Source of the DNA: Octopus sinensis
Lineage: Eukaryota
Assembly: GCF_006345805.1 (NCBI RefSeq)
Contig: NC_043014.1
Coordinates: 7,936,001-8,000,000 of the forward strand
DNA: 64,000 nt
Direction: 5' to 3'
In this document: one piece after another, positions 9,519 to 42,762 of the stretch
Position numbering within the stretch: the first letter of the stretch is position 1
Layout: each line of letters starts with the position of its first letter
Translations under genes and position numbers: made by a program
The notes under the pieces: generated by a model
Seen by the model: the letters and a program-made list of their open reading frames with translations, nothing else
Told to the model about the DNA's origin: nothing
Databases searched by the model: none

Positions 9519-9528
9519 TATATAAATA
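9519..9528 (+). promoter_or_regulatory. TATA box of the peroxidase-like gene
   Basis: TATATAAATA lies about 130 nt upstream of a consensus donor (GAG|GTAAGT at 9660/9661) that carries the in-frame ATG. Confidence 0.6.
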
Positions 9529-9655
9529 CCGGGAGATTTTGCGGTCTTACTACTTCGCTAATCACCCTGGTACTGAACTGGCAAGTCTTGCATAAACCAA
9601 CGTCGTATCCGAATATTTGCAACGTTTTCATTCCTCAAAGAAAATAAAAAGAAAA

Positions 9656-9660
9656 ATGAG
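9656..9660 (+). CDS. Exon 1 coding part (ATG AG; exon starts about 9550)
   Basis: AAAAATGAG|GTAAGT. Joining to 14353 gives M-R-M-L-V... in frame. Confidence 0.7.
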
Positions 9661-42600: not shown

Positions 42601-42618
42601 AATATGACACAGAAATAA
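9656..42618 (+). CDS. Secreted animal heme-peroxidase-fold protein lacking heme-binding and catalytic residues, with C-terminal TSP1-like module (spliced, ~570-590 aa)
   Basis: 13 GT-AG exons with consistent phases except one gap (22904-26053). Motifs NGQCNN, LPLPRK, FLREHNKL, FQHITYNEYLPMLLG, QFQTLQTGDRFYYE and QLTEIRKTS..LLCRN match the peroxidase-cyclooxygenase superfamily. Confidence 0.88.
9976..10176. mobile_element. hAT-type MITE
   Basis: TIRs CAGTGCTTTTCAA / TTGAAAACCACTG with a perfect 8-bp TSD GATTAGAC (9968-9975, 10177-10184). Confidence 0.9.
11643..12097 (+). mobile_element. Helentron/HINE-like non-autonomous element
   Basis: 5' ACTAG...ACCCGTGCTTTGCTCGGG hairpin and 3' CAGCTTTATAGATATTGAT. 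Same architecture as 33547-33944. Confidence 0.55.
12540..12992 (+). mobile_element. CR1-like LINE family 2, 3' fragment
   Basis: LSYEERLKTLDHYSLEKRRRRGDLI. 3' UTR CCCCCTACATGGCCTTGC with (TTAAC)n tail, as at 19034 and 61200. Confidence 0.88.
13275..13715 (+). mobile_element. SINE family A copy
   Basis: Same head, body and tail as 305-775. Confidence 0.88.
14353..14399 (+). CDS. Exon 2: signal peptide (R)MLVALLVTGIAVILQ
   Basis: ttttccctag|G...CAAG|gtaagt. Hydrophobic stretch; phase 2 to 1. Confidence 0.85.
14848..15320. mobile_element. Cluster of SINE B copies in opposite orientations
   Basis: Minus partial 14848-14945, plus copy 14955-15185, minus partial 15183-15320. Confidence 0.85.
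15445..15827 (-). mobile_element. tRNA-derived SINE family C copy (tail type i)
   Basis: Head GGAGGCGCAATGGCCCAGTGGTTAGGGCAGCGGACTC...GGTTTCGATTCCC. Same tail as 41795-42155. Confidence 0.88.
16094..16109 (+). CDS. Exon 3, 16-nt micro-exon (DCLVS)
   Basis: tattgcag|ATTGCCTTGTAAGCAG|gtaagt. Phase 1 to 2, exactly what is needed to join exon 2 to exon 4. Confidence 0.75.
16290..16660 (-). mobile_element. SINE B dimer
   Basis: Two units joined at the tail-to-GTATTTCGTC junction. Confidence 0.85.
16665..17420 (-). mobile_element. Second Tx1-clade LINE 3' fragment
   Basis: VAVAKEEIWRT...LINFFKFHLK...VNVERM is homologous to the C-terminus of ORF 6772-7953. 3' end TTAGCCCTTGTGGCCAATAAAAGAA. Confidence 0.85.
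17697..17790. repeat. (AAT)n microsatellite
   Basis: Direct inspection. Confidence 0.95.
17791..18295 (+). mobile_element. R4/Dong-like (RLE-endonuclease) LINE C-terminal fragment, degenerate
   Basis: Motifs IQAAEDQAL, CCICNRVDETITHITNEC (CCHC), HDQVAKGLH, KILLDFPVQTD, VVDVA*PFD and EKID*Y..LKYEI..L....VKIVP. Confidence 0.75.
18341..18762 (+). mobile_element. SINE family A copy
   Basis: Same as 305-775. Confidence 0.88.
18823..18962 (+). CDS. Exon 4: peroxidase N-terminal motif (SCIFTSSTTCSPITYYGINGQCNNEASKYAGSENSPLSRYLTYLAT)
   Basis: Long pyrimidine tract then ctgcag|C...ACGG|gtacgt; phase 2 to 1. Matches the C..YRxxDGxCNN...WG...F.R consensus. Confidence 0.88.
19034..19358 (+). mobile_element. 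CR1-like LINE family 2, 3' fragment
   Basis: Near-identical to 12680-12990; (TTAAC)n tail. Confidence 0.88.
19400..20390 (-). mobile_element. Mariner transposase remnant interrupted by a GC-rich insert (~19660-20030)
   Basis: MKQQSSRW..KAR..KMMMICF..KGIVHTEFLP.GPTVN, and HPLYSPNFTSCDFLFLFP (YSPDL motif). Confidence 0.78.
20428..20714. repeat. (AAT)n microsatellite
   Basis: Direct inspection. Explains the poly-N and poly-I ORFs. Confidence 0.95.
20831..20892 (+). CDS. Exon 5 (GGTGTTPYKNFFGDALPLPRK)
   Basis: tttcctttag|GT...AAAA|gtaagt; phase 1 to 0. LPLPRK resembles the LPxAR motif. Confidence 0.85.
22215..22553 (-). mobile_element. SINE family C copy (tail type iv, ending (ACAA)n)
   Basis: Same head and body as the other C copies, different tail. 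Confidence 0.82.
22879..22903 (+). CDS. Exon 6, 25-nt micro-exon (LKVAAQEQ)
   Basis: tcttttcttctctttcag|CTG...CAAG|gtaaat; phase 0 to 1. Confidence 0.78.
23173..23396. mobile_element. Mariner-type MITE
   Basis: Imperfect TIRs CGAGGGGTTGCTGAAAAGGTCCTGGC / CCCAGGAACTTTTGAGCACTCCATG, ending at TA. Confidence 0.55.
23760..23985 (-). mobile_element. SINE family B copy
   Basis: Same as 3326-3553. Confidence 0.88.
26054..26157 (+). CDS. Exon (CLGIDHNGNTDQRISCGACMNYYKPVLSDNLKCT)
   Basis: gaattttcag|T...ACCG|gtaaga; phase 2 to 1. C-x17-C-MNYYK spacing equals the CFPL..P.NDP....C.PFFRS segment of peroxidases. Confidence 0.85.
26936..27207. repeat. ~68-bp inverted repeat enclosing a degenerate hammerhead-like motif (pLTR relic)
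   Basis: Arms 26936-27004 and 27139-27207. Minus strand 27052-27091 reads CCA-CTGATGC-GGTCACAAGAGTGTGAT-GAAAGAACTC-TGG. A third arm copy is near 54953. Confidence 0.7.
27567..28031 (-). mobile_element. SINE family A copy
   Basis: Reverse complement of 305-775. Confidence 0.88.
28181..28237 (+). CDS. Exon (GKFNLNSGFLPLTGTSFVG)
   Basis: caaatttcag|GA...GGAG|gtaagt; phase 1 to 1, open frame. Confidence 0.82.
28657..29036 (-). mobile_element. Helentron/HINE-like element
   Basis: Reverse complement of the 33547-33944 family (ACTGGCAGTATCGCCCGGCGTTGCTCGGG...). Confidence 0.65.
29609..29915 (+). mobile_element. SINE family C copy (tail type ii)
   Basis: Same tail as 58962-59255. Confidence 0.85.
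29980..30580 (-). mobile_element. CR1-like LINE family 1, degenerate 3' fragment
   Basis: CDSLGFPGPQLFNILPK...VPDEPTSRQEVQMR, with the shared 3' hairpin. Confidence 0.88.
30625..31055 (-). mobile_element. SINE family A copy
   Basis: Reverse complement of 305-775. Confidence 0.88.
31577..31875 (+). mobile_element. SINE family C copy (tail type iii)
   Basis: C head and body followed by GCGATGGACTGGCGTCCCGTCCAG and an AAT-rich end. Confidence 0.82.
32421..32868 (+). CDS. Core peroxidase exon (VSDDIKNPLVMALYHVFLREHNKL...FQHITYNEYLPMLLG...SNSFSLAYELAMDSML...IGR)
   Basis: tattttgtag| (or tttcag| at 32427) ...GGCAG|gtaagt; phase 1 to 2, 148 open codons. REHN and QHITYNEYLP are hallmark motifs. 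Confidence 0.95.
32966..33245. repeat. (TATG)n microsatellite inside an intron
   Basis: Direct inspection. Confidence 0.95.
33320..33514 (+). CDS. Exon (KIPCSFRNHCQYSDVVSVLTQDTRYLGIPPYYVFL...LLAGTY)
   Basis: tattttcag|G...TATAA|gtaagt; phase 2 to 2. Aligns gap-free to DLxALNxQRxRDHGLPxY. Confidence 0.9.
33547..33944 (+). mobile_element. Helentron/HINE-like element
   Basis: 5' ACTAGCAGTATCACCCGGCGTTGCTCGGG and 3' GACAGACAG...CTTTTATATATAAAGAT. Related copies at 28657 and 53630. Confidence 0.65.
34575..35030. mobile_element. SINE A 3' half (minus) fused to SINE B dimer pieces (plus)
   Basis: Sequence matches both families. Confidence 0.8.
35521..36830. mobile_element. Three adjacent SINE A copies (+ 35521-36045, - 36073-36420, + 36453-36830)
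   Basis: Sequence matches 305-775. Confidence 0.85.
36948..37420 (-). mobile_element. RTE-type non-autonomous retroelement with (ATG)n tail and internal ~65-bp repeats
   Basis: (CAT)n, GGATGCCCTTCCTAACGCCAACC, and four TTTTACGT-led units. Confidence 0.6.
38196..38356 (+). CDS. Exon (YIYDVDFLSGVFLETIPSSEKLGTTLKKMIQEQFQTLQTGDRFYYENTNVFTP)
   Basis: attccag|A...CCTG|gtaagt; phase 2 to 1. Carries the DIDL..G..E and QF..L..GDRF motifs. Confidence 0.93.
38954..39275. repeat. Tandem repeat, ~107-bp unit x3
   Basis: TGTTTCTACACACGCCCAAGGCA...TACAACTGT recurs at about 38954, 39061 and 39167. Confidence 0.9.
39719..39948 (+). mobile_element. SINE family B copy with ~18-bp TSD
   Basis: ACATATGTGTAAGATATT occurs on both sides. 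Confidence 0.9.
40217..40316 (+). CDS. Exon (AQLTEIRKTSMALLLCRNVASLTSVKQHAFQMS)
   Basis: cgtatttcag|CT...AGTTC|gtgagt; phase 1 to 2. Matches QL.EIRK.SL..I.CDN...F. Confidence 0.92.
40535..41760 (+). mobile_element. Very degenerate Mutator-like (MULE) transposon remnant
   Basis: Terminal array of GGACAAAAG motifs. IMDFG..N and GYHF remnants resemble the MULE DFE..GC.FH motifs. Many stops. Confidence 0.4.
41795..42155 (+). mobile_element. SINE family C copy (tail type i)
   Basis: TSD-like TATTGAA(G/A)TTGT on both sides. Confidence 0.88.
42270..42618 (+). CDS. Last exon: end of the peroxidase fold, TSP1-like module and helical tail
   Basis: tttttctag|G...AAA TAA TAA; 115 open codons. ACSGIAEIDFCDY is followed by WSAYQSSSTECSGFKIEFRTC...CVGDPFRLTSC. 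Confidence 0.88.
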
Positions 42619-42756
42619 TAAGAATAACACAAAGTAACTGCAGGAGGAGACGTAGTAGCAGTAGTAGCATTAGCAATATTTATAGTAATAAGAGTATAAA
42701 CAGTACTACGTTATATTTTCAAGTACATAATGCTGATTTGTTAAGAATAGAATACA

Positions 42757-42762
42757 AATAAA
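42757..42762 (+). terminator. Candidate polyadenylation signal AATAAA
   Basis: About 140 nt after the stop codon, at the end of unique sequence. Confidence 0.5.

What the first reader, a model, noticed from the sequence alone, without database searches (positions are those of the whole stretch)
9519..42762. Intact, apparently expressed secreted pseudo-peroxidase: heme ligands and catalytic residues replaced
Seen: long open exons, strong splice sites, TATA box, signal peptide, double stop and AATAAA argue for a live gene. Gap-free alignments to the peroxidase-cyclooxygenase consensus show the active site is gone. NxFxxAxxRxGHS reads NSFSLAYELAMDS, so the proximal His (MPO His336) is Asp (codon 32711-32713) and Arg333 is Leu. 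GDxRxNE reads GVSDDIK, with no Arg239 or Glu242. LNxQRxRDHG reads VLTQDTRYLG, so Asn421 is Leu and Arg424 is Asp. Structural motifs (REHN, QHITYNEYLP, GDRF) are kept. Established: these residues are required for heme binding and catalysis. Inference: a catalytically dead peroxidase fold under structural selection, repurposed as a secreted matrix, gland, adhesive or ligand-binding protein. This is the best candidate here for an undescribed function.
Basis: partly seen in the sequence, partly recalled or inferred. Interest (0 to 1): 0.85.

Follow-up and report, generated by a model that had tools for sequence, protein, structure and literature searches.

The report
Haem-less peroxidase-like gene in octopus
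An intact, already annotated Octopus sinensis gene encodes a secreted protein that keeps the animal-peroxidase fold but has lost every residue needed to hold haem and do catalysis; it belongs to a fast-evolving, tandemly duplicated, octopus-only family of such 'dead' peroxidases whose real job is still unknown.

Summary
Window 9519-42762 (+) carries one 14-exon gene whose spliced product is identical to RefSeq XP_036366590.1, 'peroxidase mlt-7-like' of Octopus sinensis (638 aa). So the gene is annotated, under a misleading enzyme name.

It matches Pfam An_peroxidase end to end (245 bits). The AlphaFold model (pLDDT 89) superposes on lactoperoxidase and myeloperoxidase (TM 0.72-0.78).

In a 55-sequence alignment, 43 other peroxidases keep Gln91, His95, Arg239, Arg333, His336, Asn421 and Arg424 almost without exception. 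This protein, and all 12 members of an Octopus + Argonauta clade, have none of them. The Ca2+ site and the ancestral disulfides are kept. No spare exon could restore the lost residues.

'Structural selection' is only half right. The core is conserved across the clade, and open reading frames are kept far beyond neutral expectation. But this gene differs from its O. vulgaris orthologue by 19 nonsynonymous and 1 synonymous change, with dN about 1.8 times the intron rate. Two other family comparisons give omega of about 1 and 1.5.

Best reading: a functional, non-catalytic secreted binding or adhesion protein with a fast-evolving surface. Expression, tissue and partner could not be tested. Dead peroxidases are already known (PXDNL, the DUOX domain), so this is a new member of a known kind.

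The parts
9519..9528 (+). TATA box (TATATAAATA), about 130 nt upstream of the ATG
   Evidence: Read directly. From the TATA box to the ATG there is no difference from O. vulgaris, while the sequence upstream of it differs.
9656..9660 (+). Coding part of exon 1 (ATGAG, phase 2). The exon also holds the 5' UTR; the transcription start, roughly 9550, is inferred.
   Evidence: Donor ATGAG|gtaagt. It joins exon 2 to give M-R-M-L....
14353..14399 (+). Exon 2, hydrophobic core of the signal peptide (RMLVALLVTGIAVILQ)
   Evidence: tblastn with P0003 100%; splice sites read; model.
16094..16109 (+). Exon 3, a 16-nt microexon (DCLVS)
   Evidence: Found by pattern search, cag|ATTGCC...AGCAG|gtaagt. 100% conserved in O. 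vulgaris.
18823..18962 (+). Exon 4, start of the peroxidase domain (CSPITYYGINGQCNN...)
20831..21010 (+). Exon 5. Holds the degenerate distal motif FGRLLKFDL (20959-20985): Gln91 to Arg115, Asp94 to Lys118, His95 to Phe119. The Ca ligand Asp120 is kept.
22879..22903 (+). Exon 6, a 25-nt microexon (PESCCSGA)
   Evidence: Pattern search, good splice sites.
26054..26157 (+). Exon 7 (CLGIDHNGNTDQRISCGACMNYYKPVLSDNLKCT), a Cys-rich loop region
27298..27387 (+). Exon 8. Ca2+-site motif THVIDAS (27324-27344) is retained.
28181..28237 (+). Exon 9 (GKFNLNSGFLPLTGTSFVG). Supplies the G of 'GVSDDIK'.
32421..32868 (+). Exon 10. Holds (G)VSDDIK (Arg239 to Asp, Glu242 to Lys227), REHN, QHITYNEYLP, and the degenerate proximal motif AYELAMDS (32693-32716: Arg333 to Leu316, His336 to Asp319).
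33320..33514 (+). Exon 11. Holds the clade-specific Cys pair IPCSFRNHC and VLTQDTRYLG (33372-33401: Asn421 to Leu390, Arg424 to Asp393).
38196..38356 (+). Exon 12 (…DVDFLSGVFLE…GDRFYYEN…)
40217..40316 (+). Exon 13 (AQLTEIRKTSMALLLCRN…), end of the peroxidase domain
42270..42621 (+). Exon 14 coding part: a Cys-rich TSP1-like module, a three-helix tail and the double stop TAATAA (42616-42621)
42757..42762 (+). Polyadenylation signal AATAAA, about 140 nt after the stop
   Evidence: The 3' UTR is 99.5% identical in O. vulgaris, with AATAAA at the matching distance.

Best explanation
The locus is a functional gene for a secreted, disulfide-rich and Ca2+-stabilised protein. It keeps the animal haem-peroxidase fold as a scaffold but cannot bind haem or turn over peroxide: a pseudo-enzyme.

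It belongs to a tandemly duplicated family restricted, as far as the databases show, to incirrate octopods (Octopus and Argonauta). That family descends from molluscan 'peroxidase + TSP1 repeat' proteins.

Shown:
- Gene integrity.
- Retention of the fold.
- Loss of all catalytic and haem-contact residues across the family.
- Retention of the Ca site, the old disulfides and new clade-specific Cys residues.
- Long-term retention of open reading frames.
- Fast amino-acid change at family-variable positions.

Inferred: the protein acts by binding rather than catalysis. The remodelled former haem cleft (Arg to Asp/Leu, His to Asp/Phe) and/or its variable surface would engage a partner. The C-terminal TSP1-like module and helical tail would anchor it to matrix or a cell surface. 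The high dN/dS and the tandem duplication point to a co-evolving partner such as a pathogen, a gamete or egg coat, or prey.

My single most likely guess is a peroxinectin-like recognition or adhesion role without the enzyme activity. That specific role is weakly supported.
For: Identity and integrity:
- The 14 exons translate exactly to XP_036366590.1.
- All 14 exons and their splice dinucleotides are intact in O. vulgaris.
- The TATA-to-ATG region and the 3' UTR are conserved.

Fold:
- PF03098 is matched over profile positions 3-530 of 530 (245 bits).
- AF2 gives pLDDT 88.9 and pTM 0.89.
- Foldseek against LPO/MPO gives E about 1e-30, TM 0.72-0.78 and rmsd about 3.6 A.

Dead site:
- In alignment A2, Gln91, His95, Arg239, Arg333, His336, Asn421 and Arg424 are each kept in at least 38 of the 39-43 non-clade sequences aligned at that position, and in none of the 12 clade members.
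- Ca ligands Asp96, Thr168, Asp172 and Ser174 are kept in all clade members that cover them.
- In peroxidasin, mutating only the Gln91 and Asp94 equivalents already abolishes activity (PMC8533639).
- No non-exonic peroxidase-like HSP exists in the window.

Functional rather than decaying:
- The clade spans Octopus and Argonauta at 38-58% identity with conserved motifs.
- It has clade-invariant new residues: Cys375, Cys381, Cys537, Asp393 and Leu316.
- For the paralogue pair P0011/P0002 (dS 0.148), an ORF stays open by chance in only 0.25% of neutral simulations.
- Differences in that pair fall from 52% of sites at family-variable columns to 7% at invariant columns.
- The 14 amino-acid differences between the O. 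sinensis and O. vulgaris orthologues sit at family-variable positions (mean conservation 0.45 against 0.66, p = 0.0016).

Fast evolution:
- 19 nonsynonymous against 1 synonymous difference: dN 0.0128, dS 0.0024, introns 0.0071.
- Binomial p = 0.047; Poisson against the intron rate p = 0.013.
- The Argonauta tandem neighbours give omega 1.5.

Secretion and binding modules:
- Hydrophobic N-terminus and 20 Cys in the mature part.
- The C-terminal module aligns with a Pfam-detectable TSP_1 repeat in chiton and mussel relatives.
- The best, non-significant structural matches of the C-terminal module are TSR domains.
Against: - No expression, tissue or protein evidence could be obtained here.
- The exact protein is on record on only one contig, the chromosome. 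No transcript-derived copy was seen in the collection.
- The short-branch pattern rests on 20 substitutions. It is only marginally significant and is also compatible with recently relaxed constraint.
- The neighbouring paralogue P0006 is much more conserved between the same two species (3 differences in 1284 nt). So this gene may be the least constrained member.
- AlphaFold cannot show whether a cofactor is absent.
- The binding partner and the adhesion role are pure inference.
- TSP_1 is not detected by Pfam in this protein itself.
Confidence: 0.65

Rival explanations
1. Incipient pseudogene. The family is functional, but this particular copy has recently lost constraint in the O. sinensis / O. 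vulgaris lineage. It drifts while still looking intact.
For: - Coding divergence (1.04%) is at or above the intron rate (0.71%).
- Omega is far from purifying.
- The paralogue P0006 is 4.5-fold more conserved between the same species (Fisher p = 0.009).
- The probable O. bimaculoides orthologue (XP_014777265.1) is only 74% identical over aa 31-133.
- No transcript-derived copies were seen.
Against: - A neutral copy should show about 3.6 nonsynonymous per synonymous change, not 19:1 (p = 0.047).
- Its changes should be spread without regard to family conservation, yet they avoid conserved positions (p = 0.0016).
- No stop, frameshift or splice-site loss occurs in either species across 14 exons, two of them microexons.
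- The promoter-to-ATG stretch is perfectly conserved.
- At 1% divergence, however, intactness is weak evidence.
Confidence: 0.2
2. Still a redox or haem protein. Haem or another cofactor would be held by non-canonical ligands, for example Met318/Asp319 on the proximal side, giving an unusual activity.
For: - The fold, the cleft-lining helices and the Ca site are kept.
- Met318 sits next to the proximal position.
- The neighbouring gene XP_036366591.1 keeps both His residues, Arg239 and Glu242. Intermediates may therefore still bind haem.
Against: - All seven canonical haem-contact and catalytic positions are replaced, including both propionate-binding Arg residues (to Leu and Asp) and both ester-forming acids (to Lys).
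- The residue at and next to the proximal position varies freely among paralogues (M/L/V/G followed by A/D). No alternative ligand is conserved.
- The distal His is replaced by Phe or Ala.
Confidence: 0.05
3. Structural or matrix component: a bulk building block of a secreted material such as the egg chorion or stalk, mucus or a gland secretion, rather than a specific recognition protein.
For: - Relatives are named 'chorion peroxidase-like', and peroxidase-domain proteins recur among molluscan shell-matrix proteins (introduction of bioRxiv 10.1101/2021.07.10.451900).
- A 'chorion peroxidase' transcript peaks at the fertilisation stage in the O. maya oviducal gland (PMC8976471).
- A 'peroxidase-like' transcript is high in Paroctopus posterior salivary gland (PMC12607849).
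- The protein is secreted, disulfide-rich and has a TSP1-like module.
Against: - None of these reports can be tied to this clade.
- The O. maya qPCR primers match neither the window nor any fetched paralogue locus. Their sequence encodes an AYHDG motif typical of active-type peroxidases (my reading).
- There are no low-complexity or repetitive regions typical of bulk matrix proteins.
- Omega of 1 or more is unusual for bulk structural proteins.
Confidence: 0.1

Closest known systems
Human peroxidasin-like protein (PXDNL) and the endonuclease PMR1 derived from it
   Same: A member of the peroxidase-cyclooxygenase superfamily that keeps the fold. It is enzymatically inactive because residues essential for catalysis are replaced, and it is presumed to act through other properties (PMC8533639; PMC4937341 listed).
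   Different: PXDNL carries LRR, Ig and vWC domains and is a single vertebrate gene. The octopus protein has only a signal peptide, the peroxidase domain, a TSP1-like module and a helical tail. It belongs to a multi-gene tandem family, and its loss of haem-contact residues is more complete. No relationship beyond the shared superfamily was found.
Peroxidase-homology domain of mammalian DUOX1/2
   Same: A peroxidase fold without the canonical haem ligands, used as a structural or regulatory ectodomain (general knowledge). DUOX1 appears among the sequence and structure matches.
   Different: The DUOX domain is fused to a membrane NADPH oxidase. Similarity is much weaker here (E 1e-5; TM normalised by target 0.3-0.5) than to LPO/MPO.
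Molluscan secreted peroxidases with a C-terminal TSP1 repeat (e.g. Liolophura XP 'chorion peroxidase-like' P0017, Sinanodonta P0084, Haliotis 'mlt-7-like' P0101)
   Same: Same architecture (signal, An_peroxidase, Cys-rich WS-x-W module, tail) and the closest non-octopod sequences at about 28-30% identity. These are the likely ancestors.
   Different: They keep every catalytic residue and a Pfam-detectable TSP_1. The octopod clade has lost the residues, shortened the loop before GDxRxNE and gained new Cys residues.
Crayfish and insect peroxinectin
   Same: An invertebrate secreted peroxidase-family protein whose best-known role is cell adhesion and opsonisation (general knowledge). A KGD tripeptide occurs at aa 620-622 here.
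   Different: Peroxinectin retains haem and activity. The KGD here is not conserved in paralogues and is probably chance.
Tandem haem-peroxidase clusters of cephalopods (Euprymna light-organ halide peroxidase cluster; octopus clusters)
   Same: Lineage-specific tandem expansion of peroxidase genes arose independently in squid and octopus (PMC6386654, Fig. 4 legend and text). The octopod genes here are also neighbours on one chromosome.
   Different: The Euprymna halide peroxidase is reported there as producing hypohalous acid, so it is catalytic. That paper does not mention loss of catalytic residues in the octopus genes.

Membership tests
Animal haem peroxidase fold (Pfam PF03098, peroxidase-cyclooxygenase superfamily): homology | Sequence match above the curated threshold over the whole domain | tested here: met
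   245.4 bits against a cut-off of 25. Residues 40-519 cover profile positions 3-530 of 530.
Animal haem peroxidase fold (Pfam PF03098, peroxidase-cyclooxygenase superfamily): homology | Three-dimensional fold superposable on solved LPO/MPO | tested here: met
   AF2 pLDDT 88.9. Foldseek hit 6l2j_A: E 7e-31, TM 0.72/0.77, rmsd 3.7 A over about 600 columns.
Animal haem peroxidase fold (Pfam PF03098, peroxidase-cyclooxygenase superfamily): homology | Ca2+-binding ligands (MPO Asp96, Thr168, Asp172, Ser174) and ancestral disulfide cysteines | tested here: met
   Asp120, Thr182, Asp186 and Ser188 are kept. Cys25, 33, 45, 133, 157, 171, 505 and 528 are shared with most other peroxidases.
Catalytically competent haem peroxidase | Distal His95 and Gln91, plus Asp94 for the ester link | tested here: not met
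   Phe119, Arg115 and Lys118. His is present in 38 of 39 other aligned peroxidases and Gln in 39 of 39.
Catalytically competent haem peroxidase | Distal Arg239, and Glu242 in GDxRxNE | tested here: not met
   GVSDDIK: Arg becomes Asp and Glu becomes Lys227. Arg is present in 42 of 43 others.
Catalytically competent haem peroxidase | Proximal His336 with its partner Asn421 | tested here: not met
   Asp319 (or Met318 in the pairwise LPO alignment) and Leu390. His is present in 42 of 42 others and Asn in 39 of 43.
Catalytically competent haem peroxidase | Propionate-binding Arg333 and Arg424 | tested here: not met
   Leu316 and Asp393. Arg is present in 42 of 42 and 42 of 43 others. Asp393 is invariant in the clade.
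Catalytically competent haem peroxidase | Bound haem and measurable peroxidase activity | not testable with these tools
   Needs purified protein.
Thrombospondin type-1 repeat (PF00090) in the C-terminal module | Profile match, W-x-x-W / R-x-R layers, six-Cys pattern, TSR fold | tested here: inconclusive
   No TSP_1 hit in this protein. TSP_1 scores 23.3 and 21.4 bits at the aligned position in chiton and mussel relatives. W, R and Cys are conserved in the clade alignment. The top Foldseek hits of the isolated module are TSR domains, but with E of 0.3 or higher.
Peroxinectin-type adhesion protein | Integrin-binding KGD/RGD motif conserved; adhesion activity | tested here: inconclusive
   KGD at aa 620-622 is kept in O. 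vulgaris but absent from paralogues. Activity is not testable.
Pseudogene | Stops, frameshifts, lost splice sites, or neutral substitution pattern | tested here: not met
   The ORF and all 26 splice dinucleotides are intact in two species. The 19:1 N:S ratio and the bias towards family-variable sites are not the neutral pattern. Power is low at 1% divergence.
Expressed gene | Transcript and/or peptide evidence | not testable with these tools
   The only evidence is indirect. The RefSeq model uses 16- and 25-nt microexons, which are hard to place without transcript support (my inference). No RNA-seq is accessible here.

The most novel reading that the evidence does not exclude
An octopod-specific family of haem-less peroxidase-fold proteins has been re-used as a rapidly diversifying extracellular recognition system. 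Candidates are gamete or egg-coat interaction, pathogen binding, or a prey-directed secretion. The emptied haem cleft would then be a new ligand pocket. The neighbouring gene XP_036366591.1 would preserve an evolutionary intermediate that still has both histidines.
Probability: 0.35. Interest if true: 0.65.

Novelty: new member of a known kind. Interest (0 to 1): 0.45.

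Why it matters
- Database names such as 'peroxidase mlt-7-like', 'chorion peroxidase-like', 'myeloperoxidase' and 'heme peroxidase 2' make at least a dozen octopod genes look like enzymes. 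Transcriptome and proteome papers then read such names as antimicrobial or chorion-hardening activity. For this clade that reading is almost certainly wrong.
- The family offers a clean natural series: active molluscan ancestors, then an intermediate neighbour gene, then fully dead copies. This could show how a haem enzyme becomes a binding scaffold.
- Its omega of 1 or more, together with tandem duplication, marks it as a candidate for a co-evolving interaction in octopus biology.
- It is not a new principle. Pseudo-enzymes, and dead peroxidases in particular (PXDNL, the DUOX ectodomain), are well known.

Tried and rejected
- (1) My first model had 9 exons and 571 aa. It was in frame with good splice sites but skipped five real exons. 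It was replaced after P0003 showed the full structure.
- (3) I searched for a transcript or exon restoring His/Arg. tblastn with 21 active and inactive relatives finds nothing outside the 14 exons.
- (4) Literature search found no paper on 'mlt-7' plus octopus, and none citing XP_036366590 or XP_036366593 or the matching UniProt ids. 'Pseudoperoxidase' searches return unrelated myoglobin and lipoxygenase work.
- (5) Papers on octopus ink, salivary gland, oviducal gland and argonaut eggcase mention peroxidases but cannot be linked to this clade. The O. maya qPCR primers do not match.
- (6) I tried to date the loss outside octopods. P0075 and P0079 are partly degenerate relatives from Logan transcript contigs (SRR27666058) of unknown species. 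A search with P0079 found no named close relative.
- (7) DNA for the O. bimaculoides orthologue fragment P0077, for P0010 and for P0074 was not on record. No dN/dS at intermediate distance could therefore be computed for this exact gene.
- (8) Pfam on the C-terminal module alone gave only sub-threshold noise (fn3, 16.9 bits).

Full report
**What is there**

Reading the + strand between 9.5 and 42.8 kb, I first assembled a 9-exon, 571-aa in-frame model. It matched Pfam An_peroxidase. A homologue search then returned P0003, 'peroxidase mlt-7-like [Octopus sinensis]', 638 aa. It was identical in every shared exon but carried extra segments.

tblastn and pattern searches located the missing pieces. 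These include two microexons of 16 nt (16094-16109) and 25 nt (22879-22903). The resulting 14-exon model has AG/GT at every border and consistent phases. It translates to P0003 exactly. P0003 is RefSeq XP_036366590.1.

So the window is Octopus sinensis DNA and the gene is already annotated.
- TATATAAATA at 9519-9528.
- ATG at 9656.
- Double stop TAATAA at 42616-42621.
- AATAAA at 42757-42762.

Nothing else resembling a peroxidase lies in the window, in introns or flanks, on either strand. The flanks hold LINE-type reverse-transcriptase and endonuclease ORFs.

**Fold kept, chemistry gone**

The full protein matches PF03098 from profile position 3 to 530 of 530 (245 bits). An AlphaFold2 model built on a 55-sequence alignment is confident (mean pLDDT 88.9, pTM 0.89). 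Its best PDB matches are lactoperoxidases and myeloperoxidases (E about 1e-30, TM 0.72-0.78, rmsd about 3.6 A, 23% identity).

In that same alignment I read the columns of the catalytic and haem-contact residues, using MPO numbering from general knowledge of the MPO and LPO structures. Counts are among the non-clade sequences aligned at each column.

| MPO residue | Kept in other peroxidases | This protein |
|---|---|---|
| Gln91 | 39/39 | Arg115 |
| Asp94 | (ester link; varies) | Lys118 |
| His95 | 38/39 | Phe119 |
| Arg239 | 42/43 | Asp |
| Glu242 | (ester link; varies) | Lys227 |
| Arg333 | 42/42 | Leu316 |
| His336 | 42/42 | Asp319 |
| Asn421 | 39/43 | Leu390 |
| Arg424 | 42/43 | Asp393 |

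The four Ca2+ ligands are kept, and so are most ancestral cysteines.

A pairwise alignment to mammalian LPO shifts the proximal position by one, to Met318. The alignment with invertebrate peroxidases, which have one more residue there, supports Asp319.

For comparison, mutating only the equivalents of Gln91 and Asp94 abolishes activity in peroxidasin. PXDNL is regarded as inactive for similar substitutions (PMC8533639).

**It is a family, not a single oddity**

The word-indexed search and the exhaustive HMMER search of 1.84 billion representatives give the same picture.
- A tight group has E < 1e-100 and 37-58% identity.
- The group contains only Octopus sinensis, O. vulgaris, O. bimaculoides and Argonauta hians proteins.
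- After it comes a sharp drop to ordinary peroxidases at about 30% identity.

All 12 clade members in alignment A2 lack the seven residues above. They share clade-specific invariants: Asp at the Arg424 position, Leu/Ile at the Arg333 position, and new Cys375, Cys381 and Cys537.

The genes are neighbours:
- In O. bimaculoides, P0011 and P0007 lie about 22 kb apart.
- In A. hians, P0014 and P0009 are head-to-tail.
- In O. vulgaris, the orthologue of this gene and two further members lie within about 300 kb.

Independent tandem peroxidase clusters in squid and octopus were noted before (PMC6386654). That paper does not mention lost catalytic residues.

A sister branch looks like an intermediate state. 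It contains XP_036366591.1, next in accession order and on the same chromosome, and an Argonauta protein. It keeps both histidines, Arg239 and Glu242 but has lost Gln91, Arg333, Asn421 and Arg424.

The closest non-octopod relatives come from a chiton, a freshwater mussel and an abalone. They are fully active-type and carry a C-terminal TSP1 repeat that Pfam detects. The octopod C-terminal module aligns to it and keeps the Trp, Arg and Cys pattern, but it no longer scores as TSP_1. Modelled alone (pLDDT 86), its best structural matches are TSR domains, below significance, followed by a three-helix tail.

**Selection**

I fetched the O. vulgaris locus. All 14 exons and all splice dinucleotides are intact. 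The public O. vulgaris protein model (523 aa) simply skips exons.

Across 1,914 coding sites there are 20 differences:

| Measure | Value |
|---|---|
| Nonsynonymous : synonymous differences | 19 : 1 |
| dN | 0.0128 |
| dS | 0.0024 |
| Omega | about 5 |
| Divergence of the 13 introns | 0.71% (190/26,717) |

The excess of replacements is marginally significant against omega = 1 (binomial p = 0.047). It is clearer against the intron rate (Poisson p = 0.013).

The replacements avoid family-conserved positions (mean conservation 0.45 against 0.66, p = 0.0016). Half of them lie in the last exon.

The neighbouring paralogue P0006 shows only 3 differences in 1,284 nt between the same two species, with introns at 0.82%. 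So constraint varies among copies.

At greater distance, the paralogue pair P0011 (O. bimaculoides) and P0002 (O. sinensis) gives dS 0.148, dN 0.144 and omega 0.98 over 245 codons, with one in-frame indel. Yet an ORF of that length stays open in only 0.25% of neutral simulations. Differences fall from 52% of sites at family-variable columns to 7% at invariant ones.

Argonauta tandem neighbours give omega 1.5.

Taken together, the family is maintained by selection. It has a conserved core and fast, probably adaptive, change elsewhere. Plain 'structural purifying selection' is not what the short branches show. A recent relaxation of this particular copy cannot be excluded.

**How it most likely works**

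Shown: a secretory-type N-terminus, 20 cysteines in the mature part, a kept Ca site and a kept fold, with no haem ligands. The former cleft is re-lined with Asp, Leu, Phe and Lys, and there is a TSP1-derived module plus a helical tail.

Inferred: the protein is secreted and works by binding, not catalysis. Its partner co-evolves with it, which would explain omega of 1 or more and the tandem duplication.

Whether the setting is immune recognition or adhesion (peroxinectin-like), the egg coat and gametes, or a gland secretion cannot be decided here. I lean to recognition or adhesion, with low confidence.

Reports of 'peroxidase-like' or 'chorion peroxidase' transcripts in octopus salivary and oviducal glands, and of peroxidases in ink, could not be tied to this clade. 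The published O. maya primers match neither the window nor any fetched locus.

**Novelty and verdict**

The gene is annotated, and tandem octopus peroxidase genes have been noticed. I found no description of the family-wide loss of the haem site.

Dead members of this superfamily are a known kind: PXDNL and PMR1, and the DUOX ectodomain. I therefore rate it a new member of a known kind. It has moderate interest, for three reasons:
- It corrects misleading enzyme names for a dozen genes.
- It offers a stepwise natural series from enzyme to scaffold.
- It flags a fast-evolving secreted family in octopods.

Expression, haem content and partner remain to be tested.

Noticed in passing
window 5133-7953 (+), 49871-52944 (-), 62038-62820 (-): Long ORFs of non-LTR retrotransposons: RVT_1 at 74 and 99.5 bits, and an Exo_endo_phos endonuclease. 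No other host gene was found in the window outside 9.5-42.8 kb.
   Followed up: partly
window 19414-20354 (-), inside intron 4: Two overlapping ORFs of 177 and 210 aa that looked like a transposase remnant. Pfam gives no hit for the 210-aa ORF.
   Followed up: partly
window introns, e.g. 14916-15098, 16515-16670, 17547-17696, 23849-24049, 39715-40014: Many copies of a short interspersed repeat, recognisable by the pseudo-translation 'RNWYLIYRPRKDERQSRPRRNLNSERSGRRNTA'. Abundant TATG, CA and AAT microsatellites fill the introns.
   Followed up: no
window 18775-18822; exons 2+3, 6+7 and 9: An alternative acceptor at 18775 joined directly to exon 1 is also in frame. It gives a second signal-peptide-like N-terminus (MRNFFLFILFSSLFFICSSC). 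Exons 2+3 (63 nt), 6+7 (129 nt) and 9 (57 nt) can each be skipped in frame. Whether such isoforms exist is unknown.
   Followed up: partly
L001 (O. vulgaris OX597833.1:12024044-12081360) and L006 (12221643-12323526): The O. vulgaris protein models are faulty. CAI9737353.1 (523 aa) skips exons 3, 4 and 8 and has a wrong C-terminus, although all 14 exons are intact. P0005 (875 aa) fuses two neighbouring genes over about 100 kb.
   Followed up: yes
O. sinensis XP_036366591.1 / XP_029647656.2 (P0074, P0218), next in accession order and on the same chromosome: A peroxidase-like paralogue in an intermediate state. It keeps the distal His, GDDRINE and the proximal His (AVHSM) but has lost Gln91, Arg333, Asn421 and Arg424. 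An Argonauta counterpart (P0078) exists.
   Followed up: partly
protein aa 620-622 (window about 42561-42569): A KGD tripeptide (YYKKGDMKK), the integrin motif type reported for crayfish peroxinectin. It is kept in O. vulgaris but absent from paralogues, so it is probably chance.
   Followed up: partly
L002 (Logan SRR27666058 contig, 2284 nt) and relatives P0075, P0243: Intronless transcript contigs from unidentified organisms encode partly degenerate peroxidase + TSP1-like proteins. P0079 has Asp at the proximal His position but keeps the distal His and Arg239. The species could not be determined.
   Followed up: partly
L008/L009 (Argonauta hians BAAFZT010000176.1:602319-628360): Two family members are head-to-tail neighbours 39 bp apart in the annotation. 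They are 92% identical, with omega 1.5 over 300 codons.
   Followed up: yes
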